Below are positions 683 to 38,497 of a stretch of DNA of 64,000 nucleotides, one piece after another. The position numbers and the translations under genes were made by a program. A model generated the notes under the pieces. That model did not search any database and was not told where the DNA came from. It saw nothing but the letters and a program-made list of their open reading frames with translations. The stretch lies in IMG/VR virus record IMGVR_UViG_3300005529_000001, positions 1-64,000 of that record. One strand, given 5' to 3'. Positions within the stretch are counted from its first letter, which is position 1, and the number at the start of each line of letters is the position of its first letter.

Positions 683-757
683 ACGTTCACCTTAGCGAGT
701 CACCCGCTTATGCCAGGCGCAAGGACCCGAGCGACCGTCGGCGATGGTTACTTGCGT
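683..757 (-). ncRNA. AGUA/GAA module copy A
   Basis: ACG-CA-AGUA-ACC...GGU-GAA-CGU, downstream of tRNA-Gly(CCC). Confidence 0.6.
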
Positions 758-763
758 CTTCCT

Positions 764-837
764 GGGAGCGACCGACGGGGTTCGAACCCGTGCCTGCAAG
801 TTGGGAACCTGCATTGCTACCACTACACCACGGTCGC
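764..837 (-). tRNA. trnG: tRNA-Gly(CCC)
   Basis: cloverleaf, GCAGG-TTCCCAA-CTTGC. Confidence 0.9.
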
Positions 838-841
838 GTTT

Positions 842-902
842 CGCTTTCACCTACGCCCCCTCCGGGTCATACCCAGCGGGGGTTTGGGAGTGGTTACTTG
901 CG
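842..902 (-). ncRNA. AGUA/GAA module copy B
   Basis: CGC-A-AGUA-ACC...GGU-GAA-A-GCG; inner CCCCC/GGGGG stem. Confidence 0.65.
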
Positions 903-975
903 GAGCGGGCAACGGGATTCGAACCCGTGACACCCTGCTTGGAAGGCAGGAACTCTACCGCTGAGTTATGCCCGC
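902..975 (-). tRNA. trnG: tRNA-Gly(TCC)
   Basis: CCTGC-CTTCCAA-GCAGG. Confidence 0.95.
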
Positions 976-993
976 ATGTCTTTAACTATCTTA

Positions 994-1869
994 CTACGCA
1001 GCTACGTCTCCGTTCAACTTGGTGCTCAGAGCCTGGTAACGTACCAGGATGTCGGTCTGGTCTTCCAGCACCGCTCGTTGGTGTGAGAAAGCGAAGTGAC
1101 AAACCACTGCATCTCCAACGATCCACAGCGGTTTCAATAACTGTTCTGGGATCCGAGTCGTCAGTTCCACTTCGTCACGGGGGCCCACCTGACCGCCAAA
1201 CCTCTTGAATGATTCTCCGGTCCATGCCATCGTACCGATGCGTTGCCGGCCGGTGATGTAGTGAGAATCAAAATAGAGATCCTCGACGTGGTTGGTCTCA
1301 GCAAGCTCAAGAAAGCGCTTGTGGATGTGTGCTGCAAACTCGCCGTTGGTGCACGCGATTGGGCACCGTGGGTCACCAGTCGAGTGACCGAGATCGACGT
1401 CTAGGGTCCCCCTGTCCTGTTGCAGCTTTGACGTGTATGGGATGTTGAAGACATTACCAACGCAAGCGTAGTTGTGAGGCTCCCGATCGATGACAGCCCC
1501 GAACATGTTCTGGAAGAACTCATCATGCACGTAACAGATGTCATCATCGATCTTGCAATACAACGTGTTGGGTTCGATGCAATCAGAGTAGAACCTGTAG
1601 ATCGAGTCGTTGAACTGGTAGTGGTTACGTTTGGCGTCGTACAGGGCTTTGTTCAGCTGCCCCTTCGGCATCGATCGCTTGACCTTTGGGAATGTCTGTT
1701 CCATTCTCGCGAAGTACTCGAGGTCGCTCTCCACGTCGGTGTTGACCCACAACCTGACCTCATCAATGATGCCAGCATGACGGTCAGCCAAGAGGTACGG
1801 GAGCAACACCCTGAGGTACCGGTAACGGCCCGAAGGCACGCAAATGACGACCTTTCGTCCTTGGAACAT
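994..1869 (-). CDS. GT-A fold glycosyltransferase-like protein
   Basis: N-terminal VVICVPSGR strand, KIDDDIC DxD motif. Confidence 0.6.
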   Translation of the reverse strand: MFQGRKVVICVPSGRYRYLRVLLPYLLADRHAGIIDEVRLWVNTDVESDLEYFARMEQTFPKVKRSMPKGQLNKALYDAKRNHYQFNDSIYRFYSDCIEPNTLYCKIDDDICYVHDEFFQNMFGAVIDREPHNYACVGNVFNIPYTSKLQQDRGTLDVDLGHSTGDPRCPIACTNGEFAAHIHKRFLELAETNHVEDLYFDSHYITGRQRIGTMAWTGESFKRFGGQVGPRDEVELTTRIPEQLLKPLWIVGDAVVCHFAFSHQRAVLEDQTDILVRYQALSTKLNGDVAA

Positions 1870-1880
1870 GCCAGATTATA

Positions 1881-1950
1881 CCACGTTCACCTATGGCGGC
1901 CAGTGTCGTTATCTGTTAGCTGGTGCACGCTTACGACTGGTTACTCGTGG
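1881..1950 (-). ncRNA. AGUA/GAA module copy C
   Basis: CCACG-AGUA-ACC...GGU-GAA-CGUGG; the CCA is that of tRNA-Gly(GCC). Confidence 0.75.
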
Positions 1951-2022
1951 AGCGGATGACGGGGCTCGAACCCGTGACATTGTGCTTGGCAAGCACACAT
2001 TCTACCACTGAATTACATCCGC
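1948..2022 (-). tRNA. trnG: tRNA-Gly(GCC)
   Basis: GTGC-TTGCCAA-GCAC, CCA encoded. Confidence 0.95.
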
Positions 2023-2044
2023 AATGATCGTAACTATACAACAC

Positions 2045-2134
2045 GGAGGAAGCGAAGGGATTCGAACCCTTGGGAGCCCAAGGGGCTCCACCAGCTTTCC
2101 AAGCTGGCCGTTTCAACCTCTCACGCACGCTTCC
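2045..2134 (-). tRNA. trnS: tRNA-Ser(GGA)
   Basis: long variable arm, CCAGC-TTGGAAA-GCTGG. Confidence 0.95.
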
Positions 2135-2137
2135 ATG

Positions 2138-2335
2138 TCACAGTTGTCTTGCTAGCTCATACTGCTCCTGTCGCAGGAGCTCAATCGCCGCATCGCCGAC
2201 GAAACACAAGCTGTTTTTGTTATCTTCAGCTTCGCGGATCATCTCCTTGATGTGTTTAGCACGCTCAAGAAGACGTTCCCTGGTAGTTGGATTGCGGCCC
2301 CCGAACACGTCTGTTTTCAAGCACATCAGGCACAT
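2138..2335 (-). CDS. hypothetical protein
   Basis: ORF filling gap between tRNA and upstream gene. Confidence 0.5.
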   Translation of the reverse strand: MCLMCLKTDVFGGRNPTTRERLLERAKHIKEMIREAEDNKNSLCFVGDAAIELLRQEQYELARQL

Positions 2336-2350
2336 GTTGTAACTTACCGT

Positions 2351-2878
2351 TCAGTTGGAGCTGTGTTTCTTTGACTTGACTGGTGGTTTGGGACGGAGCG
2401 TGTTCCACAACGCTTCTTGGTCTTCGTACGAGTCATGGACCATGCGCACGAAGTCTTCAGCTCGTGACATCGGCAGGATGAGAAAGGTTCCCTTGGGCAA
2501 ACGATTTTTGTTGGGTCGACCCGGGTACCGAGTCTGGCCTGGTTGCAATCCATCTTCAGCGTGGGAACCAACGTACGAAGCGAGCGACAACGTTGGGTGC
2601 TTGCTGTTTCGTAACTCAGCGCCCATGTCCTCAAGATCATCACCAAAGCCGCCCAAGTCGTAGTCAGATACATCAAAGGCGTACTTTTCATCACTTTCGG
2701 GATCGAATCCCGGGAGAAACGATCCGTCATCAGGACCAAAATCTGAGGGTTCACCGCAACGAGCGCATTGCTCACCGTGTATCCCGCTGGTTTTCTGGTC
2801 AAAACCACACCGACCACATGACCAGGTCGCAACAGCCTCCTGAACCAAACGGCGAAGCATTGCAAGACGGATCCGCAT
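2351..2878 (-). CDS. hypothetical protein with MRIRLAMLRRLVQEA N-terminus and Zn ribbon
   Basis: start trimmed downstream of tRNA; CxxC...CxxC. Confidence 0.6.
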   Translation of the reverse strand: MRIRLAMLRRLVQEAVATWSCGRCGFDQKTSGIHGEQCARCGEPSDFGPDDGSFLPGFDPESDEKYAFDVSDYDLGGFGDDLEDMGAELRNSKHPTLSLASYVGSHAEDGLQPGQTRYPGRPNKNRLPKGTFLILPMSRAEDFVRMVHDSYEDQEALWNTLRPKPPVKSKKHSSN

Positions 2879-2889
2879 CGCAGTAACTA

Positions 2890-2983
2890 TGGAGGAAGGG
2901 AGGGGATTCGAACCCCTGGGAGCCCTCACGGGCCCCTCTCGCTTTCGAGGCGAGCGCCTTAAGCCAGACTCAGCCACCCTTCC
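2890..2983 (-). tRNA. trnS: tRNA-Ser(CGA)
   Basis: CTCGC-CTCGAAA-GCGAG, long variable arm. Confidence 0.95.
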
Positions 2984-2989
2984 AGTCGT

Positions 2990-3250
2990 TCAAATGCAAG
3001 ACTGTTTGCGATTCGATGCCCAACCCATGTCAACCGCATACGCATCCCGCGTCATCTTCAACGATTGTTTGGCAGTGAGCCAGTGATGTGGGTACACCGT
3101 GAAGTGGGTGATGTGACCGCACGCTGGACACTCGTGTTCGTACTCTCCGGGTTGGAACACCATCATTGATGGCGGCAGGTGTTCACGAGATTGGCACGGG
3201 TGAAAACGCTTGTCACAGGGGTCGATGTCTCTGATCTTTCGTGTGGGCAT
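2990..3250 (-). CDS. small Zn-ribbon protein
   Basis: HECPACGH motif. Confidence 0.55.
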   Translation of the reverse strand: MPTRKIRDIDPCDKRFHPCQSREHLPPSMMVFQPGEYEHECPACGHITHFTVYPHHWLTAKQSLKMTRDAYAVDMGWASNRKQSCI

Positions 3251-3284
3251 TGTTTTTCTTTTGTTGTAGACCCATTGGGTCGTT

Positions 3285-3375
3285 AGAGGAGGGTGAGGGA
3301 TTCGAACCCCCGGGACCCCTTTCGAGGTCCTTCCGCTTTCAAGGCGGCTGCCTTAGGCCACTCAGCCAACCCTCC
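3285..3375 (-). tRNA. trnS: tRNA-Ser(TGA)
   Basis: CCGC-CTTGAAA-GCGG, long variable arm. Confidence 0.95.
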
Positions 3376-3383
3376 ACGTGAGA

Positions 3384-3590
3384 CTACTTTCGTTTCCCCT
3401 TCTTGGTCTTTGCAGATTGTTCTTGGTACATGTCTGGATGTTCTTGCGCGGTGTGTTCGTGATAGCAGTGGACGCACACCGTCGCCGGGCACTTGAGACA
3501 CAGCCACATCTCAGACGAGTCATTGGCGGGCCCGCGCTGGGGTGCGCTGACCTGGACGACCTTTTCACCGCAGTTAGGACAGGGGATCAT
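3384..3590 (-). CDS. Zn-finger hypothetical protein
   Basis: CPNC, CLKC, CVHCYHEH. Confidence 0.6.
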   Translation of the reverse strand: MIPCPNCGEKVVQVSAPQRGPANDSSEMWLCLKCPATVCVHCYHEHTAQEHPDMYQEQSAKTKKGKRK

Positions 3591-4006
3591 CGTTTCTTAT
3601 GACCGAACGTGGGCGTCTGAGAATGACAATTAGGGCACAACAAGCGCAAGTTCTCGAGGAGATGATTCGATGGTTGACCATCACGGTGATCGAGTTGAAG
3701 CGTGATAGGCAAACCGTTCCAGTCAACAATCCCACACCCTTCGCACTTGTACTCCTTCAACCCTTCCTTGACGAGTCGTTTCGCAAGTTTATGTGTAGGG
3801 TAGCCAGGGTGTTTTCCAGCGAGAATTTCTTGAAGAGGAATTTTGAGTCGGAAACCACCGTTCGTTCTTTGATAAACGCCGAAGTCTCGAGCTCGACGTT
3901 CGAAAATTCCCTGACTGACACCACTACGCATCGCTGCTTCGCGAACGTTGTTGCTGGTATTGAGCAGATGTTCAATCTGTTCTTTCGTAAGACCGTCATC
4001 AACCAT
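3587..4006 (-). CDS. HNH endonuclease (HTH-like N-terminus plus HNH)
   Basis: CEGC...LQLDHRDG...NLRLLCPNCHSQT; ATG at 3' end of tRNA-Ser(GCT). Confidence 0.85.
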   Translation of the reverse strand: MVDDGLTKEQIEHLLNTSNNVREAAMRSGVSQGIFERRARDFGVYQRTNGGFRLKIPLQEILAGKHPGYPTHKLAKRLVKEGLKEYKCEGCGIVDWNGLPITLQLDHRDGQPSNHLLENLRLLCPNCHSQTPTFGHKKR

Positions 4007-4098
4007 GGGAGGAAGCGGAGGGATTCGAACCCTCGGGAGCCCTTCCGGGCCCCACTCGGTTAGCAACCGAGCGCCTTAAGCCTCTCGACCACGCTTCC
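4007..4098 (-). tRNA. trnS: tRNA-Ser(GCT)
   Basis: CTCGG-TTGCTAA-CCGAG. Confidence 0.95.
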
Positions 4099-4112
4099 AA
4101 TTTGCAGATATT

Positions 4113-4187
4113 AGTCGGCGCAGCGTGATTTGAACACGCGACATCCCGCTTGTAGGGCGGGCGCTTCTACCCCTGAGCTATGCGCCG
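4113..4187 (-). tRNA. trnV: tRNA-Val(TAC)
   Basis: CCCGC-CCTACAA-GCGGG (C33). Confidence 0.85.
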
Positions 4188-4196
4188 TCGCTGCTC

Positions 4197-4586
4197 TCAG
4201 AGCAGCGGTAAGTGTCCGGTGATCTTGTCGAGCTCTTCGACCTTGCACGGGCCGAAAGCAGCGCAGGTCAGGGTGGGGACACCATGGAACTCTGTCTTAC
4301 CGGCATCGATGATCGGGTGGACTTCGATGTCAGCTAGCTCTGCTCTGAAGATGAGGTCACGCAGTTCCTCTTCGCTGCCACAGCGGACGACAGCCTTGGT
4401 GAACGACCCGGACAGGAGCCACTGAGCCTCTTCAAGCGAGAGCTTGACAACGATCTCATCGCCACGCTCGCTTTCGTTGTTGTCAACGAGGAACTTCATT
4501 GCGGCGTGAGCACCTTGGGCGATCATCTTGCCCTTACGCATGTTCAGATCGGTGCGTACAACGATGACTTGCTTCACGTCGCTCAT
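4197..4586 (-). CDS. pth2: peptidyl-tRNA hydrolase, Pth2 type
   Basis: KQVIVVRTDLNMRKGKMIAQGAHA...DAGKTEF...T...GP...ITGHLPLL. Confidence 0.92.
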   Translation of the reverse strand: MSDVKQVIVVRTDLNMRKGKMIAQGAHAAMKFLVDNNESERGDEIVVKLSLEEAQWLLSGSFTKAVVRCGSEEELRDLIFRAELADIEVHPIIDAGKTEFHGVPTLTCAAFGPCKVEELDKITGHLPLL

Positions 4587-4627
4587 AGCTACCTCCAGGT
4601 TTTCAAAGAACGCCACGTCCGAAGACG

Positions 4628-4702
4628 TGGTGACCCGTGTTGGATTCGAACCAACGACCACCTGCTTGTCGAGCAGGTGCGCTACCGCTGCGCCAACGGG
4701 CC
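4628..4702 (-). tRNA. trnV: tRNA-Val(GAC)
   Basis: CCTGC-TCGACAA-GCAGG (C33). Confidence 0.9.
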
Positions 4703-4751
4703 TTGAAGAAGGTGTGTCCAGGTTCATGGTACACCTTCAAGTAAGTATCGA

Positions 4752-5147
4752 TCAGGTCTGGCGACTGTCTGCACCCGGGCGTTTCGAGCGTTCCTCTGCC
4801 CGACGGTCCTTGGCCTTCAGGCGCCCACCTGTCACCGTTTCGGGCGCTTCCGTGACCTGAACCGGGGTTGCATCCTTCGAAGCTTCCCTGGCTTTTCTGG
4901 TGGGCTTGGAGGGGTTGTCGATCAGGTCCTGGAGCCGAGCGCGTTGGGCCTTAGCCCCGACGCCCTTGCCCAGCCGCGAATCGAGCGCAGCAAGCTGAGC
5001 CTTCGGGCTCAGGGCTGACCACACCCCCTGTCGCTCCTTGGCTTCCTTGCGCCGGAGCTCGATGTTGGCCGGGTTGTGGCGTCGCCCGCCGACGCCCGGG
5101 TAACGTCGCTTCGAGTTGTCCTTCTTGCCTGACTTCGTGCTTTCCAT
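4752..5147 (-). CDS. basic hypothetical protein
   Basis: ATG-started ORF, K/R rich. Confidence 0.6.
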   Translation of the reverse strand: MESTKSGKKDNSKRRYPGVGGRRHNPANIELRRKEAKERQGVWSALSPKAQLAALDSRLGKGVGAKAQRARLQDLIDNPSKPTRKAREASKDATPVQVTEAPETVTGGRLKAKDRRAEERSKRPGADSRQT

Positions 5148-5150
5148 GTG

Positions 5151-5351
5151 TTACCTTCCGTATGTTGGGTCCTGGTGATCGAGATCGCGAGGGTTTCTTG
5201 CGGGAGGGCTTGGGCACACAGGGGCGACGTAGACGTACTTGTCTTCGACCTCGTGCGTGCATGGGTCACGTCGAGGCGTCTTGGGGATGTCCCACTCGCC
5301 AACGCAACCCACCAACGACGCCAACAACACGGCCCAAACGAGCGTCCGCAT
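5151..5351 (-). CDS. putative lipoprotein
   Basis: MRTLVWAVLLASLVGC lipobox; TACGAT 6 nt before ATG. Confidence 0.6.
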   Translation of the reverse strand: MRTLVWAVLLASLVGCVGEWDIPKTPRRDPCTHEVEDKYVYVAPVCPSPPARNPRDLDHQDPTYGR

Positions 5352-5464: not shown

Positions 5465-5468
5465 ATTT

Positions 5469-5595
5469 CACACGTTCACCTACAGTCCATCGCGGGAATT
5501 GCACCCGCACCCCCTGGATTTCAGCCAAGTGTGCTACTGTTACTACCAGACGGCTCAGAGACCCGCTCCGTTAGGAGCTTTGGGTTACTGGTGTG
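5469..5595 (-). ncRNA. AGUA/GAA module copy D carrying a CCA-less tRNA-Phe(GAA)-like body (5484-5555)
   Basis: CACAC-C-AGUA-ACC...GGU-GAA-C-GUGUG; inner CTTGG-CTGAAAT-CCAGG and T-arm GCGGG-TGCAATT-CCCGC. Confidence 0.75.
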
Positions 5596-5674: not shown

Positions 5675-5758
5675 GGGATCTTTCAACTGTTGCCGGACTC
5701 GCACCGGTTGAGCGACTCTTTGATGCGCCTCGTCTTAGTTGATCGTTTACTGGATCCC
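5675..5758 (-). ncRNA. AGUA/GAA module copy P (AAC/GUU variant)
   Basis: GGGAUC-C-AGUA-AAC...GUU-GAA-A-GAUCCC; T-arm-like CCGG-TGCGAGT-CCGG. Confidence 0.7.
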
Positions 5759-5915: not shown

Positions 5916-6000
5916 CATCGCATTTCACATTCACCTATGTGGGTACAAACCACTGCGACGGGCGAACCCGCCATCGGACTTCAGTTGTTACTTGGCGATG
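5916..6000 (-). ncRNA. AGUA/GAA module copy E (ACA/UGU variant)
   Basis: CAUCGC-CA-AGUA-ACA...UGU-GAA-AU-GCGAUG; inner UUCG hairpin; overlaps stop codon of upstream CDS. Confidence 0.65.
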
Positions 6001-6669: not shown

Positions 6670-6784
6670 GATTGACGTTCACCTCTTCGGAGTTTCACCG
6701 ACTTCGCGTACTCACCCAGCCTTAAAAGCGACCGAGCTTTCGACTGCCGATCCCGGCGAGTTTATGTTGGTTACTCTGTCAATC
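6670..6784 (-). ncRNA. AGUA/GAA module copy F
   Basis: GAUUGAC-AG-AGUA-ACC...GGU-GAA-C-GUCAAUC; inner ACUCGCC/GGGUGAGU and TCGG-TGAAACT-CCGA. Confidence 0.75.
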
Positions 6785-10193: not shown

Positions 10194-10279
10194 CCCAACG
10201 AGTTTTCACTTTCTCACTACCCGGTACTCCCGCCGGGTTCGCAGCTGCCGCTACCTGCGGCAAGTTACTGTTCGCTGGG
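10194..10279 (-). ncRNA. AGUA/GAA module copy O (ACUU/AAGU variant)
   Basis: CCCAGCGA-AC-AGUA-ACUU...AAGU-GAA-AAC-UCGUUGGG; two inner hairpins. Confidence 0.75.
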
Positions 10280-12670: not shown

Positions 12671-12764
12671 ACCCGTTCACCTGCTGCCCTGGAGTTGAAC
12701 TCAGGCCCTCCCGCTTGGACGGCGGGCGTGCGACCGTTACACTTGCACATGTGGTTACTTGGAT
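12671..12764 (-). ncRNA. AGUA/GAA module copy G carrying a degenerate tRNA body (loop CGTCCAA)
   Basis: AUCC-A-AGUA-ACC...GGU-GAA-C-GGGU; CCCGC/GCGGG arm plus TTCAACT T-loop. Confidence 0.7.
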
Positions 12765-12930: not shown

Positions 12931-13040
12931 GCTTTCACCTTCAAGGAATTGAACCTCCACCTCCCAGCTTCGCGCCAGGTGTTCTCCCATTAAACTACAG
13001 TTAGCTTCTCAGCCAACTGGGAACTGGTTACTCACGGAGC
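12931..13040 (-). ncRNA. AGUA/GAA module copy H carrying a tRNA body lacking the 3' acceptor strand
   Basis: AGUA-ACC...D-arm TAGTTTAATGGGAGAA, loop CGCGAAG, GGTTCAATTCC, then GGU-GAA. Confidence 0.65.
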
Positions 13041-13113: not shown

Positions 13114-13234
13114 CTTCGTTCACCTGCGTCGAAAGGGACTCGAACCCTTACCCAAGCTCAACACTTGGAAACCGGTTTTGTGCCGGCCGCGTATGCCTGT
13201 TTTTCCGCCATCGACCTATGTTGGTTACTGGAAG
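13114..13234 (-). ncRNA. AGUA/GAA module copy I carrying a CCA-less tRNA-Leu(CAA)-like body
   Basis: CUUC-C-AGUA-ACC...GGU-GAA-C-GAAG; GCCGG-CACAAAA-CCGGT, long variable arm, GGTTCGAGTCC. Confidence 0.72.
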
Positions 13235-34581: not shown

Positions 34582-35611
34582 TTGGGCGTGTCACCAGACT
34601 TTGACAACCTCACTCGTGCGCACCGTGAGGCTTGCACGCTATGAAGTCAGTTGATGCTAACATAACCACCCGTCATTGCCTTGTATAGGCTGGATGATCG
34701 TGATGAATATCAGCCCAACACCTTGTGCTTCTTGATGTCGCTCAGCGCTCGTGCAACATCAAGCGCCATCGTCATCTGCCCCTGCGCTTTCCCGCTGATG
34801 ACGGAAGAGCACAGAGCGTCGGCCGTCCGCAGAGCGGCTTTGAGCAAGACAAGCTGGGTCTCATCCAGAGTGATCGTCACTGACTTCGCCATAAGATTTC
34901 TCCTGGTTCCAGAGCAGCAACCTACATCTACGTTCCGTTAGCTTTCACAAAAGACTTTGTCGGTTCATCCTGGGTGAACCAACTCGAGGTGATGCTTGGA
35001 CATCGAGTGACACATCCCCTCGTGGAAAACCACGACGTGGTCAGCCTTGGGAGACCGACGGACGATGTGAACAACCGTGTCCTTCGGGATCGTTCCCGAT
35101 GGCTTCAGGTGTTCGACCACGTCCCATAGCTGGGTGGTCAATCTTGCGCGAGCTTTAAACATTTTTGTGACTTTACTCTTTGTTGTTCTTGGGTTTCACT
35201 GCCGGGATTCCCCCACATTTGATAGGGCAATACCTCTCGAATTCGCCCGTGCGGTCCTTCAAAGTCCGCCAGAGCCCAGTCGGTGGGTCAAAATCCCAGA
35301 TGACATCAGCACTAAACGTAACCTCAGTGCCGAATGGTTTGGGCTTAAATTCGCCGCCTGTTACACTTGCGGTCTGCTTGTGACGGATGCAGACCACGTG
35401 AACCAGACCATCGGAATCAACATGCACATACCCCCGTGGGATTGCTAACGTGTTGAACGTGTCAATATGATCGACGACGCTCCTACGAACGGCGGCTTCG
35501 TCAGCTCTCAACGTTTCCTTGATCTTCCGGATGAGAAAGCCTAAAGCCCGCGCTTTCTTAACGTTGGGTATCACCGAGACAACCTACCATTGTTCACGGT
35601 TAGGGTTGCAC

Positions 35612-35685
35612 TGGTTGGGGCGGAGGGATTCGAACCCCCGTAAGCTGATTCAAAGTCAGCGGTCCTGCCGTTGGACGACACCCCA
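35612..35685 (-). tRNA. trnQ: tRNA-Gln(TTG)
   Basis: GCTGA-CTTTGAA-TCAGC. Confidence 0.93.
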
Positions 35686-35713
35686 ATAGAGAGTAACAAG
35701 CTGCGTTCCGTGT

Positions 35714-35785
35714 TGGTTGCTCCGACTGGACTCGAACCAGTGGCCCCCGCTCCATGGTAACGGGTGTCCGCCGATATGCGGAGCA
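35714..35785 (-). tRNA. atypical tRNA-like RNA, reduced D arm, CAT centred in loop
   Basis: 7-bp acceptor plus ACCA, canonical T arm, CCCGTT-ACCATGG-AGCGGG. Confidence 0.55.
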
Positions 35786-35787
35786 AT

Positions 35788-35883
35788 GCGTCATGTCGAA
35801 CGGAATCGAACCGTTGCCCGGGTAGCAGCCGCGAGCCTTCACAGGATTCTGTGTTTTTCCCAGTGCTTTCCTCGAACGACATG
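35788..35883 (-). ncRNA. tRNA-like RNA with 4-nt anticodon loop
   Basis: CATGTCG/CGACATG acceptor, CACAG-AATC-CTGTG, T arm AACGG-TTCGATT-CCGTT. Confidence 0.55.
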
Positions 35884-35886
35884 ACT

Positions 35887-35961
35887 TGGCAGGGGCGCAG
35901 GGACTCGAACCCTGGTAGCGAGTTTTGGAGGCTCGCGTCCTAGCCGCTGAACGACACCCCT
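35887..35961 (-). tRNA. trnW: tRNA-Trp(CCA)
   Basis: loop CTCCAAA, G73, C.A mismatch at 31-39. Confidence 0.85.
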
Positions 35962-36053
35962 GTAAAAAGCGCTGGTACATGGGACAACTTGCGTTGATCA
36001 GACGTATTGGTTGTTAGTCAGTCTTCCGACAACACTCACCATGTTTGCCAGCT

Positions 36054-36130
36054 ACGGCACCGTCGACGGGAATCGAACCCGCATTTCCTGGTAGACAGCC
36101 AAGCGACCTAATCCATTGATCGACGACGGT
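36054..36130 (-). tRNA. trnD: tRNA-Asp(GTC)
   Basis: CTTGG-CTGTCTA-CCAGG (U37). Confidence 0.85.
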
Positions 36131-36213
36131 ATTGTATCGCTGTGAGAAGCTACCAACTCCTCGCGAGGCGGTGGGGCTCCCTTGCGCTGGGCGCCCATGT
36201 TACCTTGCAGCGA

Positions 36214-36287
36214 TGGCGGTCCCGAGGAGAATCGAACTCCCGTAATACGCTAGACAGGCGTACGTCCTACCACTGAACGACGAGACC
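36214..36287 (-). tRNA. trnD: tRNA-Asp(GTC), second copy
   Basis: TACGC-CTGTCTA-GCGTA (U37), GCCA. Confidence 0.88.
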
Positions 36288-36375
36288 ATTGGCTCCTCGT
36301 TTACCTCGGCGCTTGCCGCGCGTTCTGGTGTACAGACCATGTTGGCATGGTATCGGACCTGGACTTGTTCCGGAG

Positions 36376-36447
36376 TGGAGCTCACGGGATTTGAACCCGT
36401 AACTTCCAGCTTGCAAAGCTGGCACTCTCCCGTTGAGTTAGAGCCCC
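36376..36447 (-). tRNA. trnA: tRNA-Ala(TGC)
   Basis: G3:U70, CCAGC-TTTGCAA-GCTGG. Confidence 0.92.
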
Positions 36448-36448
36448 G

Positions 36449-36530
36449 TGGAGCAGGAGGGGATCGGACCCTCAATCACGCAGCCTCCGCTGGCGAGCGG
36501 CCTTACCGAGTGACCATCCATTGCTGCCCC
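36449..36530 (-). ncRNA. Ala-acceptor tRNA-like RNA with aberrant anticodon arm
   Basis: GGGGCAG/CTGCTCC-A (G3:U70); CCGCT-CGCC-AGCGG. Confidence 0.55.
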
Positions 36531-36609
36531 GTTGCAGCGTCGGTGGGTTACGTAGCAAATTGCATTCTATAGACGAGGAACTTCAATGATAGAATTGCCA
36601 CCGAGCCTA

Positions 36610-36652
36610 GCACTTCACCTTCTTGTCGGTCCTCTGCGACTGGTTACCGTGC
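36610..36652 (-). ncRNA. AGUA/GAA module copy J (minimal, GGUA variant)
   Basis: GCAC-GGUA-ACC...GUCG/CGAC...GGU-GAA-GUGC. Confidence 0.6.
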
Positions 36653-36654
36653 AG

Positions 36655-36727
36655 TGGAGCACGCGGGACTCGAACCCGCCACCTCAACGTTGCGAACGTT
36701 GCGCTCTCCCAGATGAGCTAGTGCCCC
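36655..36727 (-). tRNA. trnA: tRNA-Ala(CGC)
   Basis: CAACG-TTCGCAA-CGTTG. Confidence 0.92.
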
Positions 36728-36780
36728 GAAAACTCCGGCATGGTGACTGCTCTCGCAGACGATCCCGGAGGGATTATGGT

Positions 36781-36856
36781 TGGCAGCGGGGGATGGAGTT
36801 GGACCACCATTTCCAAGCCTTAGACGCCTGGCGACTTGCTGTTAGTCGACCCCGCT
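36781..36856 (-). tRNA. atypical tRNA with CUA (amber) anticodon, 6-bp anticodon stem
   Basis: CCAGGC-GTCTAAG-GCTTGG; G73-CCA; D loop lacks GG; T loop TCCAACT. Confidence 0.55.
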
Positions 36857-36857
36857 G

Positions 36858-36930
36858 TGGAGCTAGCGGGATTCGAACCCGCCACCTTCTGCATGCCATG
36901 CAGACGCTCTCCCAAATGAGCTATAGCCCC
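36858..36930 (-). tRNA. trnA: tRNA-Ala(GGC)
   Basis: TCTGC-ATGGCAT-GCAGA. Confidence 0.92.
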
Positions 36931-37055
36931 GTGTGCCGGCGGTTACTCTGAGTCTTCACCTTCAGGTTTGCAGCAAAGCACGATGAAACACGCACGCTGT
37001 GTGAATGCATATCGTAGTTGGTCGCTGGTCCTCCTATCCGCGCCGGCGGATCGGA

Positions 37056-37131
37056 TGGTGATCCTGGTGGGACTCGAACCCACGAGTTTCTGCGAGTCAT
37101 GCAGACGATCTGGCCGCTGATCTACAGGATC
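37056..37131 (-). tRNA. trnV: tRNA-Val(GAC), second copy
   Basis: TCTGC-ATGACTC-GCAGA (U37). Confidence 0.85.
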
Positions 37132-37371
37132 GTGGCCGGTCTCTCCCGGCGGTCATAGCGGACGATGTGGTCCGCACGTTTTGTCTTTACCTTTCCTTCC
37201 GCTTGTTGCGGTACTGCCGTCGCCAACAGGGCCGGCACATGTATGCCATCCCCGCGAGCTGTGCAGCGATTTGACACCACTTACACATTCCGCGCCTCCT
37301 TTCGTATGAACGAAAGTGGCTACGGAGGTCTTGAATGATCCATGCAGTGACACCTCTTGTTTGGCAAGGTT

Positions 37372-37449
37372 TGGTTGCGGACACCAGGAGTCGAACCTAG
37401 CTGTTGCTGGGTTATGGGCCCAGCGTGTAAGCCGTTTCACTCGTCCGCA
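37372..37449 (-). tRNA. initiator-like tRNA-fMet(CAT)
   Basis: three G-C pairs CTGGG-CCCATAA-CCCAG; U1:A72; ACCA. Confidence 0.75.
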
Positions 37450-37523
37450 GTGGGTCCGGAGGGCAATGATCCCACACGCTTCCGGTTAAAAGCCGGCTGC
37501 TCTGCCAATTGAGCTACGGACCC
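37449..37523 (-). tRNA. trnK: tRNA-Lys(TTT), atypical T loop
   Basis: CCGG-CTTTTAA-CCGG; T loop ATCATTG. Confidence 0.8.
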
Positions 37524-37529
37524 GTATTA

Positions 37530-37636
37530 CATCGTTCACCTGCCAGGATTCGAACCTCCATGTCCGGCTTGAAAGGCCAGCATCCTACCATTAGATGACG
37601 AGACCTTGCGATCTCGGGGTAAGTGGTTACTTGATG
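37530..37636 (-). ncRNA. AGUA/GAA module copy L carrying a tRNA-Glu(TTC)-like body without 3' acceptor strand
   Basis: CAUC-A-AGUA-ACC...GGU-GAA-C-GAUG; CTGGC-CTTTCAA-GCCGG; GGTTCGAATCC; GCAA hairpin. Confidence 0.75.
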
Positions 37637-37708
37637 GAGCCCAAGGCTGGAGTTGAACCAACGACCTCCCGGTTATTTACCGGTTGCTCTACACTGAGCT
37701 ACTTGGGC
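37635..37708 (-). tRNA. atypical tRNA: Thr-like acceptor, AAT-centred loop
   Basis: GCCCAAG/CTTGGGC-TCCA; loop TAAATAA. Confidence 0.55.
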
Positions 37709-37709
37709 A

Positions 37710-37781
37710 TGGTGGAAAGGGCTGGACTCGTCCAGCACTTCCGGGTCAAGAACCCGGCGCTCTGCATTGAGCTACCTCTCC
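37710..37781 (-). tRNA. trnK: tRNA-Lys(CTT), 6-nt T loop
   Basis: CCGGG-TTCTTGA-CCCGG; GCTGG-ACGAGT-CCAGC. Confidence 0.6.
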
Positions 37782-37811
37782 GTGCTTGAATTCTATACAT
37801 CGCCGGGCGTC

Positions 37812-37876
37812 GCCTGTTCACCTACACCAGATTCATAGTCTGGGTAACCGCGCTTCCGCGGCATGGGTTACTGGGC
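37812..37876 (-). ncRNA. AGUA/GAA module copy M
   Basis: GCC-C-AGUA-ACC...GGU-GAA-CA-GGC; hairpins CCGCG/CGCGG and CCAGA/TCTGG. Confidence 0.68.
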
Positions 37877-37883
37877 TTCGCAG

Positions 37884-37956
37884 CCTCTCTGTCCGGACTC
37901 GAACCGGAAGTCTCTACCTTCGCAGGGTAGCATGTTTTCCATTACACCACAGAGAG
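37884..37956 (-). tRNA. trnR: tRNA-Arg(GCG)
   Basis: CTACC-CTGCGAA-GGTAG; CTCTCTG/CAGAGAG acceptor. Confidence 0.75.
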
Positions 37957-38370
37957 ATAATCGTTGAAATATTTGATGCCCTTTCGCTGGCCGTTCTTGG
38001 GTGGATCAAATCGAAGTGAGAAGCTTGTTGTGTGACCCTCGATCTCACTCATCGACACATATGCTACGACCTTTCGATCGATGACATACAGTGCCATGTA
38101 GTCGATGTTTCGTGTTGTATATCGCAACCCGCTGCGACGGTTCGTGAAGTGTGACAGGCAGACCGTCCCTTTCTTGGATGATTTCACTGTCTTCGCTTGA
38201 AGTTTGACAACTTGATTTTCTTTCACAGCGATGATGTCAATGTGACTGACGTCGCCATAGGGAAAGAAGACATCGTAACCTTGGTTCACTAGATCACTTG
38301 CAATTGCAAGTTCTCCTACGTTGCCTGTTGCTTTGGTGACCGACAGCATGATGCTATCGTAACGTGTCAT
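37942..38370 (-). CDS. PD-(D/E)XK endonuclease
   Basis: GELAIASDL...PYGD...DIIA...KLQAKT; Y...IDYMALY. Confidence 0.82.
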   Translation of the reverse strand: MTRYDSIMLSVTKATGNVGELAIASDLVNQGYDVFFPYGDVSHIDIIAVKENQVVKLQAKTVKSSKKGTVCLSHFTNRRSGLRYTTRNIDYMALYVIDRKVVAYVSMSEIEGHTTSFSLRFDPPKNGQRKGIKYFNDYLSVV

Positions 38371-38374
38371 CGTT

Positions 38375-38497
38375 GGACGTTCACATTCACGCTTCACTGG
38401 CGTCCCTGCACCGTGCATCTAGGGGAATGTACGCGCCGAAACGCAGTCCCCCAGGTGGGAATTGAACCCACTCAAGTTTGAGCAGTTACTTGTCACG
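38375..38497 (-). ncRNA. AGUA/GAA module copy N (ACUG/CAGU) carrying a circularly permuted tRNA-like domain
   Basis: order: T-arm GTGGG-TTCAATT-CCCAC, closed 7-bp acceptor CTGGGGG/CCCCTAG, short D-like hairpin. Confidence 0.65.

What the first reader, a model, noticed from the sequence alone, without database searches (positions are those of the whole stretch)
683..38497. Fifteen-copy inter-tRNA RNA module: outer helix, AGUA/GAA internal loop, covarying ANN/NNU helix, variable payload
Seen: the same closing structure occurs on the transcribed minus strand at 683-757, 842-902, 1881-1950, 5469-5595, 5675-5758, 5916-6000, 6670-6784, 10194-10279, 12671-12764, 12931-13040, 13114-13234, 36610-36652, 37530-37636, 37812-37876 and about 38375-38497. 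The 5' strand is AGUA-ANN (GGUA in one copy) and the 3' strand is NNU-GAA. The inner helix is ACC/GGU in 11 copies and shows compensatory variants AAC/GUU, ACA/UGU, ACUU/AAGU and ACUG/CAGU. Outer helices differ in sequence but pair in nearly every copy (e.g. GAUUGAC/GUCAAUC, CCCAGCGA/UCGUUGGG, CAUCGC/GCGAUG); copy H pairs weakly. Fourteen copies start within about 15 nt of a tRNA 3' end, and I saw none in the protein-only regions. Established: AGUA/GAA is the bulged-G (loop E, sarcin-ricin type) motif, a frequent protein-docking site. Inference: this is a family of discrete small RNAs cut out of the tRNA polycistron, with a constant protein-binding handle and swappable cargo. The layout recalls bacterial Y RNAs (Ro60/Rsr-binding terminal helix plus tRNA-like module). 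As I recall, the Y RNA consensus is GNCGAAN0-1G, against GGUGAACG here. They could be Ro60/PNPase decoys or tethers, or baits for tRNA-targeting defence nucleases. I do not recognise this as a named family.
Basis: partly seen in the sequence, partly recalled or inferred. Interest (0 to 1): 0.93.

Follow-up and report, generated by a model that had tools for sequence, protein, structure and literature searches.

The report
S-turn clamp RNAs in phage tRNA arrays
A giant uncultured phage, and at least 15 related phage contigs, carry many copies of an undescribed RNA "clamp" between their tRNA genes; it closes around spare tRNA-like RNAs or simple hairpins and probably keeps them out of normal tRNA maturation, for a purpose not yet known.

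Summary
All 15 copies exist at the stated coordinates on the minus strand. A covariance model trained on 13 short copies returns exactly those 15 as its top 15 hits in the window.

The shared part is a clamp: a variable outer helix, an AGUA/GAA internal loop (sarcin-ricin, or bulged-G, consensus), and a 3-bp ACC/GGU helix. Outer and inner helices covary.

The family occurs in at least 16 IMG/VR phage contigs (38-57% GC), always inside tRNA arrays. A pattern scan of 185,579 bacterial and archaeal species genomes gave only one chance hit. No Rfam family matches, YrlA included.

The main new result concerns the payloads. They run from plain hairpins, through degenerate tRNA-Leu-like cloverleaves, to RNAs that pass the tRNA thresholds. 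In these, GGU sits where CCA would be, and ACC lies in the 5' leader.

My best reading (about 0.35): a protein-docking or processing clamp seals the acceptor end and yields stable, non-chargeable tRNA-shaped RNAs. The main rival (about 0.27) is a purely cis-acting folding or processing stem.

Membership in the Y RNA family is not supported. One distant module-bearing phage does encode a Ro60-fold protein in the same array.

The parts
683..757 (-). Copy A. Clamp with a hairpin payload. It follows tRNA-Gly(ccc) and lies upstream of the HNH ORF at 56-646.
   Evidence: Read. R1 score 33.7 bits (in the training set). Outer helix ACG/CGU, only 3 bp. No orthologue in L002 or L003.
842..902 (-). Copy B. 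Clamp with one long hairpin, filling the spacer between tRNA-Gly(tcc) and tRNA-Gly(ccc).
   Evidence: R1 score 52.2 bits. Orthologues at the same position in L002 (10971-11030) and L003 (8604-8652). The clamp is kept, the payload hairpin covaries or is replaced, and the outer helix changes from CGC/GCG to CAAC/GUUG.
1881..1950 (-). Copy C. It follows tRNA-Gly(gcc). The outer helix CCACG/CGUGG includes that tRNA's CCA. It lies upstream of ORF 994-1869.
   Evidence: R1 score 38.3 bits. Internal loop is the minimal 4x3 AGUA/GAA. Absent at the orthologous site in L002.
5469..5595 (-). Copy D. Clamp around a hairpin plus a tRNA-like cloverleaf, between tRNA-Arg(ccg) and tRNA-Arg(tct).
   Evidence: R1 score 19.2 bits, E = 0.0035, not in the training set. 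The payload at 5487-5553 scores 28.6 bits on Rfam tRNA, just under the gathering score of 29. Relaxed ARAGORN calls it Phe(gaa).
5675..5758 (-). Copy E. Inner helix AAC/GUU, outer helix GGGAUC/GAUCCC. It lies between tRNA-Arg(cct) and tRNA-Arg(ccg).
   Evidence: R1 score 13.8 bits, E = 0.14. The compensatory inner-helix change is anchored by a 6-bp outer helix.
5916..6000 (-). Copy F. Inner helix ACA/UGU, outer helix CAUCGC/GCGAUG. It follows an ORF, not a tRNA, and ends 76 nt before tRNA-Arg(cct).
   Evidence: R1 score 13.5 bits, E = 0.17. It holds two GUGAA motifs.
6670..6784 (-). Copy G. It follows tRNA-Leu(cag). Outer helix GAUUGAC/GUCAAUC. An ORF follows it.
   Evidence: R1 score 13.0 bits, E = 0.23. 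Outer helix of 7 bp.
10194..10279 (-). Copy H. Inner helix ACU/AGU, outer helix CCCAGCGA/UCGUUGGG, two-hairpin payload. It lies between tRNA-Leu(tag) and tRNA-Met.
   Evidence: R1 score 13.3 bits, E = 0.2. Orthologues exist in L003 (payload about 85% identical) and in L005 (different payload, ACU/GGU). In L006 the whole module is missing and the two tRNAs abut.
12671..12764 (-). Copy I. Clamp around a class I tRNA-like body, between tRNA-Leu(taa) and tRNA-Thr(tgt).
   Evidence: R1 score 19.5 bits, E = 0.0028. It has a T-arm-like hairpin. Orthologues at L006 6840-6928 and L005 6696-6782.
12931..13040 (-). Copy J. Clamp core with a T-arm-bearing payload, between tRNA-Thr(ggt) and tRNA-Gly(gcc). 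The outer helix is doubtful.
   Evidence: R1 score 16.0 bits, E = 0.032. The orthologue at L006 6640-6761 has ACU/AGU and a class II tRNA-like payload.
13114..13234 (-). Copy K. Clamp around a tRNA-Leu-like class II cloverleaf, between tRNA-Cys and tRNA-Thr(ggt).
   Evidence: R1 score 16 bits, E = 0.03. The order tRNA-Cys, module, tRNA-Thr(ggt) recurs in L005, L006, L027 and L073. RNAalifold on 10 such modules recovers the outer, inner, D and T stems.
36610..36652 (-). Copy L. The shortest copy (43 nt), with GGUA in place of AGUA and outer helix GCAC/GUGC. It follows tRNA-Ala(cgc).
   Evidence: R1 score 27.1 bits (training set). The minimum-free-energy fold gives the clamp.
37530..37636 (-). 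Copy M. Clamp around a hairpin plus a class I tRNA-like body, between tRNA-Ile(aat) and tRNA-Lys(ttt).
   Evidence: R1 score 20.9 bits, E = 0.0011. The payload at 37535-37601 scores 26.9 bits on Rfam tRNA, below the threshold.
37812..37876 (-). Copy N. Clamp with two hairpins. It follows tRNA-Arg(gcg) and ends 30 nt before the tRNA at 37713-37781.
   Evidence: R1 score 26.6 bits (training set). The minimum-free-energy fold gives the clamp.
38375..38497 (-). Copy O. Inner helix ACU(G)/(C)AGU, with a T-arm-like hairpin near the 5' side. It follows tRNA-Lys(ctt) and lies upstream of the PD-(D/E)XK ORF.
   Evidence: R1 score 12.9 bits, E = 0.26. Three GUGAA repeats make the 3' partner ambiguous.
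36941..36961 (-). Possible 16th copy, circularly permuted: AGGUGAA, then 7 nt, then AGUAACC. It lies 10 nt upstream of tRNA-Ala(ggc).
   Evidence: Two rare 7-mers lie 7 nt apart in the reversed order. This was not seen again in any locus, so its status is uncertain.

Best explanation
Shown: the anatomy. Each module is a leader-trailer clamp inside the phage's tRNA polycistron. Read from the outside in, it has:
- a variable outer helix, whose 5' strand starts at or within a few nucleotides of the upstream tRNA's 3' end, and whose 3' strand ends 3-6 nt before the next tRNA in the eight copies where a tRNA follows directly;
- a conserved internal loop, N-AGUA opposite GAA-M, which matches the sarcin-ricin (bulged-G, S-turn) consensus;
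- a 3-bp helix, ACC/GGU;
- a conserved A.A juxtaposition.

Shown: what the clamp closes around. The payload is a tRNA paralogue, a degenerate tRNA-shaped body (often tRNA-Leu-like) or a plain hairpin. In the tRNA-type payloads, GGU sits exactly where CCA would be, directly after an A73-like base. ACC lies 3-27 nt upstream of position +1.

Inferred: how it works. The clamp seals the acceptor end, so the enclosed RNA is a poor substrate for RNase P, 3' trimming, CCA addition and aminoacylation. Processing of the flanking tRNAs releases it as a stable, non-chargeable, tRNA-shaped or hairpin RNA. The invariant S-turn is the docking site for a protein not yet identified, either a stabilising partner or a processing enzyme.

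Inferred: what it is for. The likely biological role is in tRNA-centred conflict or control during infection, as decoys or sponges for factors that bind tRNA bodies.
For: Family and structure:
- CM R1 recovers exactly the 15 copies in the window.
- It finds 50 hits at E <= 1 in 1.04 Mb of loci, all but two of them in module-bearing contigs.
- 96.4% of cells are paired against 75.8% in shuffles. The covariation score is 0.508 against 0.134 (0 of 500 shuffles reach it), and slid controls score at most 0.06.
- The consensus from 54 modules is Y-N-AGUAACC-A ... G-N-A-GGUGAA-M-G.

tRNA nature of the payloads:
- Rfam tRNA hits above the gathering score lie inside modules: L073 7269-7339 (58 bits), L027 5232-5296 (50.6), L027 2447-2517 (40.9), L027 5426-5494 (37), L129 14322-14389 (45). 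Window copies D and M are just below threshold, at 28.6 and 26.9 bits.
- ARAGORN calls Ile(tat), Thr(tgt), Val(tac), Lys(ttt) and Leu(taa) inside clamps.
- GGU starts 0-2 nt after the discriminator.
- In the three caged tRNAs examined, the acceptor stems have mismatches near their ends.

Selection on the body rather than on decoding:
- The tRNA-Leu-like module keeps its position (tRNA-Cys, module, tRNA-Thr) and its D and T arms across diverged phages, while its anticodon-like loop varies and often lacks U33.

Stability:
- The copies that fill a tRNA-tRNA spacer would be left with 3' tails of only 3-6 nt after RNase P cleavage of the next tRNA.

Phage-specific:
- One chance hit in 185,579 species genomes.
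- None in the tRNA-rich phage XacN1.
Against: - There are no expression data, so whether discrete RNAs accumulate is unknown.
- In copies C, D, H, M, G and B the outer helix uses nucleotides 74-76 of the upstream tRNA. Maturation of that tRNA would shorten or destroy the outer helix, which favours a precursor-level role.
- Payloads are replaced at the same syntenic site (B in L003, H in L005), and whole modules come and go (A, C, H). Individual cargos are therefore dispensable.
- No candidate binding protein was found among the conserved neighbours. These are NADAR, PTH2, a SLOG protein, an RF-1-like protein, HNH endonucleases and a secreted-looking protein.
- The S-turn itself is inferred from a sequence consensus only.
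Confidence: 0.35

Rival explanations
1. Purely cis-acting processing or folding stem. The clamp folds each long inter-tRNA spacer into a closed domain. This brings the two neighbouring tRNAs together, insulates them from misfolding and hides the upstream CCA. The S-turn may also serve as the entry site for an endonuclease. The payload is filler or a decaying tRNA, and the excised piece has no function of its own.
For: - Eight of the 15 window copies fill a tRNA-tRNA spacer from end to end, and the outer helix often overlaps nucleotides 74-76 of the upstream tRNA.
- Payloads are swapped or lost at syntenic sites while the clamp core stays invariant.
- In the three caged tRNAs examined, the acceptor stems are degenerate.
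Against: - Distances from the upstream discriminator to AGUA (5-14 nt) and from GAA to the next tRNA vary, so the clamp is not a ruler for tRNA ends.
- Copies A, C and G have an ORF downstream, no tRNA follows copy O directly, and copy F has no tRNA upstream.
- Many other long spacers in the same arrays lack the clamp.
- The tRNA-Leu-like body and the copy H payload are conserved between diverged phages.
Confidence: 0.27
2. Caged tRNAs. The clamp holds back maturation of particular tRNA paralogues until a phage factor recognises the S-turn and opens or cuts it. This would give timed release of extra decoding capacity.
For: - Some enclosed RNAs pass the tRNA thresholds and have plausible anticodon loops: Ile UAU, Thr UGU, Val UAC, Lys UUU, Leu UAA.
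- The leader of 3-5 nt between ACC and position +1 is unpaired, so RNase P could still reach it.
Against: - Most payloads, including all 15 in the window, are below tRNA thresholds, lack U33 or are plain hairpins.
- In the three caged tRNAs examined, the acceptor ends are mismatched.
Confidence: 0.1
3. Y RNA-like partners of a Ro60/TROVE-fold protein. The clamp would be the Ro-binding stem and the tRNA-like part the effector module, for example a tether to PNPase.
For: - The architecture is alike: a stem formed by the 5' and 3' ends, with a conserved loop motif, plus a tRNA-like domain.
- GGUGAAMG resembles GNCGAAN0-1G (PMC4201824).
- Phage Ro60 binds Y-like RNAs that carry a CGAA bulge (PMC12135203).
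- In L129, a DUF2828+DUF7788 ORF lies in the same tRNA array, 4.9 kb upstream of the module on the same strand. Its AF2 model best matches phage Ro60, PDB entries 9l5y and 9kop (E = 2e-7, TM about 0.5).
Against: - No YrlA hit at E <= 1 over any module.
- The motif lies on the 3' strand and has U in all 54 modules. The scan that collected them required UGAA; a scan that allowed any base there found no CGAA-type site in the window.
- The tRNA-like part runs D arm, anticodon arm, T arm with the clamp at the acceptor end. It is not permuted as in YrlA.
- No TROVE or DUF2828 among the window's large ORFs, nor among the 10 largest of the 24 ORFs of 300 aa or more in the other module-bearing loci.
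- DUF2828 is common in mid-size phages; module co-occurrence in those was not tested.
- There are 15 or more copies per genome.
Confidence: 0.1
4. A small self-cleaving ribozyme that trims tRNA trailers, analogous to the theta (HDV-like) ribozymes found next to phage tRNAs.
For: - The module sits directly 3' of tRNAs.
- About 16 conserved nucleotides are concentrated in an internal loop.
- Theta ribozymes are a precedent (PMC10879173).
Against: - No hit to any Rfam ribozyme family at E <= 1.
- The distance to the tRNA end varies.
- The conserved core is fully explained by a known non-catalytic motif.
Confidence: 0.04
5. A DNA-level selfish repeat, such as a miniature mobile element or homing-endonuclease target, whose conserved ends only look like an RNA motif.
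For: - Modules are gained and lost as precise units.
- HNH genes lie in the arrays of seven module-bearing contigs, and the window's arrays also hold a PD-(D/E)XK gene.
Against: - The module is strictly specific to the tRNA strand.
- It shows U.G wobble variants (ACU/GGU in 4 modules), which would be A.C mismatches on the other strand.
- The outer helices covary with no conserved sequence.
- No target-site duplication was seen.
Confidence: 0.05

Closest known systems
Bacterial and phage Y RNAs (YrlA, Rfam RF02553; phiLo Yrl1/Yrl2)
   Same: Both are modular small RNAs. The 5' and 3' ends form a stem that carries a short conserved loop motif containing GAA, and a tRNA-like domain is attached. 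Both occur in phages. The motif GGUGAAMG differs from GNCGAAN0-1G at one position.
   Different: Here the motif is on the 3' strand and always has U where Y RNAs have C. The loop matches the AGUA/GAA bulged-G consensus, not the Ro bulged helix. The tRNA-like part is not permuted, and the clamp replaces the acceptor end. There are 15 or more copies per genome, embedded in the tRNA polycistron. No Ro60 gene was found in the window, and there is no covariance-model match.
Sarcin-ricin / loop E (bulged-G, S-turn) motif of rRNAs and other RNAs
   Same: The 5'-AGUA-3' / 5'-GAA-3' consensus is flanked by Watson-Crick pairs. On the outer side there is an extra non-canonical N.M juxtaposition, as in the 'flexible region' of the sarcin-ricin loop (that comparison rests on my own knowledge).
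   Different: This is a structural motif, not a family with one function. Here it is not capped by a GAGA loop. It sits in a leader-trailer helix next to tRNA-like bodies. Its three-dimensional fold has not been tested.
Small stable RNAs co-transcribed with phage tRNAs (T4 species 1 and 2, i.e. rnaC and rnaD; own knowledge)
   Same: Both are non-tRNA RNAs of unknown function encoded within a phage tRNA cluster and released by tRNA processing.
   Different: No shared sequence motif is known, and none was tested here. T4 has two such RNAs, not a multi-copy family with a common handle.
Theta (minimal HDV-like) ribozymes next to phage tRNAs (PMC10879173)
   Same: Both are structured RNA elements immediately adjacent to tRNAs in uncultured phages and are thought to affect tRNA maturation.
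   Different: The modules have no HDV-like double pseudoknot and no Rfam ribozyme hit. Their distance from the tRNA end varies.
Leader-trailer processing stems (bacterial rRNA RNase III stems; archaeal bulge-helix-bulge around tRNAs and rRNAs; own knowledge)
   Same: In both, sequences 5' and 3' of an RNA gene pair to form a stem with a conserved internal-loop signature that brackets the RNA to be released.
   Different: The loop signature here is an S-turn, not a long duplex or a bulge-helix-bulge. No matching nuclease has been identified, and cleavage has not been shown.

Membership tests
YrlA / Y RNA | Match to the Rfam YrlA covariance model (RF02553) at or above its gathering score | tested here: not met
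   No YrlA hit at E <= 1 in window 1-15400 or 35400-39500, nor over any module in six related loci or in L129. The two weak YrlA hits in L072 (32 bits against a gathering score of 69) overlap ordinary tRNAs, not modules.
YrlA / Y RNA | [quoted passage not shown] | tested here: not met
   The nearest motif is GGUGAAMG. It lies on the 3' strand and has U where Y RNAs have C in all 54 modules compiled; the scan that collected them required UGAA.
YrlA / Y RNA | Encoded within about 4 kb of a Ro60/TROVE gene, on the same strand | tested here: not met
   No TROVE or DUF2828 Pfam hit among the window's large ORFs. The two unassigned ORFs of about 400 aa show no profile similarity to DUF2828. The other 305 kb of the genome could not be read. 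One exception is a lead only: L129 has a Ro60-fold ORF 4.9 kb from its module.
YrlA / Y RNA | tRNA-like domain with the T arm 5' of the D arm, and the closing stem at the anticodon position | tested here: not met
   The modules run D arm, anticodon-like arm, T arm, with the clamp at the acceptor end. Only copy O has a T-arm-like hairpin near its 5' side.
YrlA / Y RNA | Binding to Ro60 | not testable with these tools
   This needs an EMSA or a pull-down.
Sarcin-ricin / bulged-G motif | 5'-AGUA-3' opposite 5'-GAA-3', flanked by Watson-Crick pairs on both sides | tested here: met
   AGUA is present in 52 of 54 modules and GGUA in 2. The GUA, GAA and inner-helix pairing of those 54 were selection criteria of the scan, and their outer helices (at least 3 bp) vary in sequence. 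Independently, the CM hits pair at A-U in 49 of 49 and at C-G in 48 of 49, and their outer helix covaries. Minimal 4x3 loops occur in C, L, L055 and L126.
Sarcin-ricin / bulged-G motif | S-turn backbone, with the G-bulge base triple and the cross-strand A stack in three dimensions | not testable with these tools
   This needs chemical probing or a solved structure.
tRNA (Rfam RF00005) | Payload scores at or above the gathering score of 29 bits | tested here: inconclusive
   Met by several payloads in relatives (58, 50.6, 45, 40.9, 37, 32.7 and 31.5 bits). Not met by any window copy: D scores 28.6, M scores 26.9, and the others give no hit.
tRNA (functional) | Seven-bp acceptor stem with a free 3' end (discriminator plus CCA, or a site where CCA can be added) | tested here: not met
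   GGU occupies the CCA position and is paired with ACC from the leader. In the three caged tRNAs examined, the acceptor stems have mismatches near the end.
Known self-cleaving ribozymes (HDV-like/theta, hammerhead, twister, twister-sister, pistol, hatchet, hairpin) | Match to the family's covariance model | tested here: not met
   No such hit at E <= 1 in either array of the window or in the related loci. Catalysis itself was not tested.
tmRNA | Match to a tmRNA model, or an ARAGORN tmRNA call with a tag peptide | tested here: not met
   Only fragments scoring 11-14 bits. ARAGORN makes no tmRNA call.

The most novel reading that the evidence does not exclude
The clamp is the common handle of a phage-specific ribonucleoprotein system that has not been described. 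A dedicated and still unidentified protein would recognise the S-turn. The phage would use the handle to convert tRNA genes and hairpins into a panel of sealed, non-chargeable RNA mimics. These would act during infection as decoys or inhibitors of host factors that bind or cut tRNAs, or as regulators of RNase P or aminoacyl-tRNA synthetases. That would be a modular RNA counter-defence or takeover platform carried in the tRNA islands of giant phages.
Probability: 0.3. Interest if true: 0.88.

Novelty: new variant of a known kind. Interest (0 to 1): 0.78.

Why it matters
The tRNA islands of giant phages are usually read as codon-usage supplements or as replacements for tRNAs that the host destroys. 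This finding shows that, in at least one widespread uncultured phage lineage, a large share of the inter-tRNA space is occupied by a conserved, covarying RNA device. The device encloses tRNA paralogues and tRNA look-alikes in a way that should exclude them from translation.

If these RNAs accumulate, they would be a new class of viral tRNA mimics with a shared handle. That would point to an unknown RNA-binding partner and to a new layer in the conflict over tRNAs between phages and bacteria.

If instead the clamp is a processing signal, it would be a new rule for how very long tRNA polycistrons are folded and cut.

There is also a practical consequence. Annotation pipelines currently count some clamp-enclosed RNAs as ordinary tRNAs: ARAGORN and Rfam both call them in L027, L073 and L129. 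This inflates estimates of the decoding capacity of phages.

Tried and rejected
- **Known RNA families.** Rfam was searched at gathering scores over the whole window, and at E <= 1 over both arrays, six related loci and L129. Nothing but tRNA-like scores falls on the modules.
- **Cultured relatives.** Megablast, blastn and tblastn against 50,697 phage records found no close relative and no module homologue. The tRNA-rich repeat of Xanthomonas phage XacN1 has no clamp.
- **K-turn reading of the loop.** Rejected by inspection, because the 5' strand has no GA dinucleotide in the required register.
- **Molecular ruler for tRNA 3' ends.** Rejected, because the distances vary.
- **Shine-Dalgarno role for AGGUGA upstream of ORFs.** Rejected. 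The spacing is 17-40 nt, and the L002 orthologue of ORF 994-1869 has no such motif.
- **Partner protein by neighbourhood.**
  - The genes shared by module-bearing contigs are NADAR, PTH2, a SLOG protein, an RF-1-like protein, HNH endonucleases and a secreted-looking 225-aa protein.
  - A MoxR ATPase and a vWA-peptidase are also present; PMC7824862 predicts this pair to be a virion-assembly chaperone.
  - None of these is an evident RNA binder.
- **Ro60 lead.**
  - The DUF2828 ORF in L129 has a Ro60-like fold.
  - The family is common in mid-size phages; none of the 80 best IMG/VR matches other than L129's own contig comes from a module-bearing contig.
  - It shows no similarity to the window's unassigned large ORFs.
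- **Recurrence of the permuted handle.** None was found.
- **Recent duplication of caged tRNAs.** Caged and free tRNA paralogues are only about 55% identical, so they are not recent copies.
- **Resemblance to 16S rRNA.** Recalled from memory, the clamp strands resemble GGUGAAG...GUAACC in the 3' minor domain of 16S rRNA. I noted this but did not test it and treat it as probably coincidental.

Full report
**Context.** The window is the first 64 kb of IMG/VR contig IMGVR_UViG_3300005529_000001 (369,475 bp). It is 57% G+C, and most of its genes are on the minus strand.
- ARAGORN finds 55 tRNA genes in two arrays, at about 0.7-15.2 kb and 35.6-39.3 kb. Rfam adds a bacterial type-A RNase P RNA at 11028-11385.
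- The protein genes are phage-like: DNA ligase, RNA ligase, a sigma-70 factor, dNMP kinase, a MoxR ATPase with a vWA-peptidase, PTH2, an RF-1-domain protein, NADAR, a SLOG protein, and HNH and PD-(D/E)XK endonucleases.
- No cultured phage is close. There is no megablast hit, and the best protein identities are about 30%.

**Check of the observation.** All 15 copies are present as described.
- The two core heptamers are strongly over-represented and strand-biased. AGTAACC occurs 14 times against 2.6 expected, 12 of them on the minus strand. AGGTGAA occurs 20 times against 8.4 expected.
- A purely structural scan finds 16 sites on the minus strand, none on the plus strand, and 1.9 +/- 1.3 in shuffles.
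- A covariance model was built from 13 short modules, only five of them from the window. The next hit has E = 1.7.
- In the 14 copies that follow a tRNA, AGUA begins 5-14 nt after the discriminator. Where another tRNA follows directly, the module ends 3-6 nt before it.
- Weak points. The outer helix is only about 3 bp in A, B, N and I. It is doubtful in J. The 3' partner of O is ambiguous, because GUGAA occurs three times there.

**The family beyond the window.**
- Two proteins encoded inside the arrays led to related contigs. These carry the module at the same syntenic positions.
  - Copy B lies between tRNA-Gly(tcc) and tRNA-Gly(ccc) in L002 and L003.
  - Copy H lies after tRNA-Leu(tag) in L003 and L005.
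  - Copies I, J and K have orthologues in L005 and L006.
- At these sites the clamp core is kept, while the outer helix and often the payload change. Examples are CGC/GCG to CAAC/GUUG, and ACC/GGU to ACU/AGU. Whole modules are also present or absent as precise units: A and C are missing in L002, and H is missing in L006, where the two tRNAs abut.
- A pattern scan of IMG/VR for a T arm followed by AGGUGAAM gave 124 matches. Twenty of them had the cognate AGUAACC and an outer helix upstream.
- Rescanning all fetched loci with a script and with the model shows modules in at least 16 contigs of 38-57% G+C, for example 11 modules within 12.5 kb of L027. About 80 unrelated control loci gave only two marginal hits.
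- The tRNA-rich terminal repeat of phage XacN1 has none.
- A two-gap pattern specific for tRNA-type modules found a single match in 185,579 bacterial and archaeal species genomes. That match lies in a coding region with no tRNA nearby.
- The element therefore appears restricted to phages.

**Anatomy.**
- From 54 modules the consensus is 5' Y-N-A-G-U-A-A-C-C-A ... G-N-A-G-G-U-G-A-A-M-G 3'.
- The Y at -2 pairs with the G two bases after GAA. N and M face each other as A.A, G.A, A.C or C.C. AGUA opposite GAA is the bulged-G (sarcin-ricin, loop E) consensus. ACC/GGU is a 3-bp helix, followed by an A.A juxtaposition.
- Copies with a minimal 4x3 loop (C, L, L055, L126) fit the bulged-G register and not a symmetric loop.
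- On the model-derived alignment of 49 distinct sequences, 96.4% of cells pair, against 75.8% in shuffles.
  - The covariation score is 0.508 against 0.134 (0 of 500 shuffles reach it), and shifting the partners by 1-3 columns drops it to 0.06 or less.
  - All three outer pairs show many double changes. That alignment is fitted to the model, so these numbers lean towards the structure.
  - Cognate outer strands also pair better than non-cognate combinations: 52% against 17% have at least 4 bp.
  - RNAalifold on an independent MAFFT alignment recovers the same helices.
- Inner-helix variants in the window (E, F, H) are compensatory and are anchored by outer helices of 6-8 bp.
- Wobble variants (ACU/GGU) and the strict strand specificity point to RNA, not DNA.

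**What the clamp encloses.** Payloads form a continuum.
- Some are plain hairpins (B, L, N).
- Many contain a T-arm hairpin and a D arm (D, I, J, K, M).
- A syntenic tRNA-Leu-like class II body follows tRNA-Cys in the window (K) and in L005, L006, L027 and L073. Similar bodies occur in L059, L072, L099 and L104. RNAalifold recovers the D and T stems, while the anticodon-like loop varies and often lacks U33.
- In relatives, several enclosed RNAs pass Rfam's tRNA threshold (58, 50.6, 45, 40.9, 37, 32.7 and 31.5 bits). ARAGORN calls some as Ile(tat), Thr(tgt), Val(tac), Lys(ttt) and Leu(taa). Window copies D and M score 28.6 and 26.9 bits, against a threshold of 29.
- In these tRNA-type modules, GGU begins 0-2 nt after the discriminator, so it sits where CCA would be. 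The conserved A before GGU corresponds to A73. ACC lies 3-27 nt upstream of position +1.
- In the three caged tRNAs examined, the acceptor stems have one or two mismatches near the end. Caged and free paralogues in the same array are only about 55% identical.
- The clamp is thus a leader-trailer structure that closes the acceptor end.

**How it most likely works.** What is shown is the structure, its conservation, its position and the tRNA-like nature of many payloads. What follows is inferred.
- With the CCA position replaced and paired, and the leader partly paired, the enclosed RNA should be a poor substrate for RNase P, 3' trimming, CCA addition and aminoacylation.
- Once the flanking tRNAs are processed, the module would be left with short single-stranded tails, and so should be stable.
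- Sixteen nearly invariant nucleotides that match a motif widely used as a protein-docking site suggest a specific partner.
- I therefore favour sealed, non-chargeable tRNA-shaped RNAs that carry a common docking handle (about 0.35).
- The tRNA-Leu-like body keeps its elbow but not its anticodon. This points to a partner that reads the tRNA body, not the anticodon.
- The main rival (about 0.27) is a cis-acting folding or processing stem.
  - In C, D, H, M, G and B the outer helix uses nucleotides 74-76 of the upstream tRNA, so maturation of that tRNA would undo part of the clamp.
  - Individual cargos are clearly dispensable.
- Caged tRNAs awaiting timed release, Y RNA-like function, a ribozyme and a DNA-level repeat are less likely. 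The reasons are given under the rival explanations.

**Comparison with Y RNAs.**
- YrlA has its GNCGAAN0-1G motif near the 5' end. Its tRNA-like domain is permuted, and it lies within 4 kb of a Ro60 gene (PMC4201824). Here the similar motif is on the 3' strand with an invariant U, the tRNA-like part is not permuted, and no YrlA hit falls on any module.
- No TROVE or DUF2828 domain is detectable in the window.
- One lead remains. In the AT-rich 394-kb contig behind L055/L129, a DUF2828+DUF7788 ORF sits inside the same tRNA array, 4.9 kb upstream of the single module and on the same strand.
  - Its AlphaFold model (pLDDT 81) best matches the Ro60 of Thermus phage phiLo over its full length (E = 2e-7, TM about 0.5).
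  - That Ro60 binds phage Y-like RNAs carrying a CGAA bulge (PMC12135203).
  - DUF2828 proteins, however, are common in mid-size phages; whether those carry the module was not tested. The link is therefore weak.

**Novelty.** I found no description of this element.
- It is absent from Rfam 15.
- Full-text searches for phage tRNA arrays combined with loop E, sarcin-ricin or tRNA-like terms gave nothing relevant.
- A survey of more than 8,000 unnamed candidate structured RNAs from IMG/VR (PMC10690425) may include individual instances, but its text does not describe a shared clamp.
- I class it as a new variant of a known kind: tRNA-mimicking, modular non-coding RNAs. There is a fair chance that it represents a distinct system.

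Noticed in passing
window 11028-11385 (-): A complete bacterial type-A RNase P RNA (267 bits) is encoded inside the phage tRNA array, directly abutting tRNA-Leu(cag). The gap at the same position in L006 (8142-8498) is the right size for an orthologue. Why a phage carries its own RNase P RNA, and whether this relates to the clamps, is open.
   Followed up: partly
window 14216-14528 (-): A 313-nt spacer between tRNA-Pro(ggg) and tRNA-Pro(cgg) folds at -133 kcal/mol (z = -2.2). It is about 83% identical to L006 5235-5549, with changes that look compensatory. There is no Rfam hit at E <= 1. It may be another undescribed structured RNA.
   Followed up: partly
window 36448-36530 (-): A tRNA-like sequence that neither ARAGORN nor Rfam calls. 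It has a 7-bp acceptor stem (GGGGCAG/CUGCUCC) and a T-arm-like hairpin, and lies just upstream of tRNA-Ala(tgc).
   Followed up: no
window 36781-36856 (-); 8929-9519 (-); 4197-4727 (-): A tRNA with a CUA anticodon (an amber suppressor, labelled Pyl by ARAGORN) occurs together with an RF-1-domain protein and a PTH2 peptidyl-tRNA hydrolase. This may indicate stop-codon read-through or ribosome-rescue functions.
   Followed up: no
window 36941-36961 (-): The two clamp strands occur in reversed order, 7 nt apart (AGGUGAA, 7 nt, AGUAACC), 10 nt upstream of tRNA-Ala(ggc). This could be a circularly permuted, hairpin-capped handle. It was not seen again in any related locus.
   Followed up: partly
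window 36131-36213 (-): This spacer has a 7-bp closing helix (AUCGCUG/CAGCGAU) and GGUAAC on the 5' side, but no GAA on the 3' side. It may be a degenerate or variant clamp.
   Followed up: no
window 14023-14140 (-): This spacer holds two T-arm-like hairpins but no clamp. It is another tRNA-like remnant or mimic.
   Followed up: no
window 56-646, 3587-4066, 39401-39730, 37942-38418 (all -): Three HNH endonuclease ORFs and one PD-(D/E)XK (PDDEXK_5) ORF lie inside the tRNA arrays, some directly next to modules (A and O). HNH paralogues recur in the arrays of seven module-bearing contigs.
   Followed up: partly
window 6884-7438, 8000-8572, 9567-10073, 11523-11876 (all -): A NADAR protein, a SLOG/YAcAr protein, a Rit1-DUSP-like protein and a nucleotidyltransferase are clustered within the array. 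NADAR, PTH2 and SLOG are the neighbours most widely shared by module-bearing contigs.
   Followed up: partly
window 5916-6000, 6670-6784, 38375-38497 (-): Extra GUGAA repeats occur in the 3' part of copies F (2), G (2) and O (3). This hints that the GUGAA element may also be read as a linear motif.
   Followed up: no
L129 5743-6179 (+) and 8001-9461 (+): The AT-rich 394-kb phage contig has a GOLLD-like RNA (90.9 bits, E = 4e-23, below the gathering score of 150) next to its tRNA array. It also has a DUF2828+DUF7788 ORF whose predicted fold matches phage Ro60. This suggests that the widespread DUF2828 phage family is TROVE-like.
   Followed up: partly
window 7305-7982 (-): A conserved 225-aa ORF of unknown family. 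It has a signal-peptide-like N-terminus and an invariant E...NHNLGN(V/I)G motif, and is shared by six module-bearing contigs. It is probably not an RNA-binding protein.
   Followed up: partly
L027 835-923, 2447-2517, 5228-5301, 5424-5497; L073 7268-7340: ARAGORN and Rfam count these clamp-enclosed RNAs as ordinary tRNAs, although their CCA position is occupied by GGU. tRNA counts for such phages are therefore probably inflated.
   Followed up: yes
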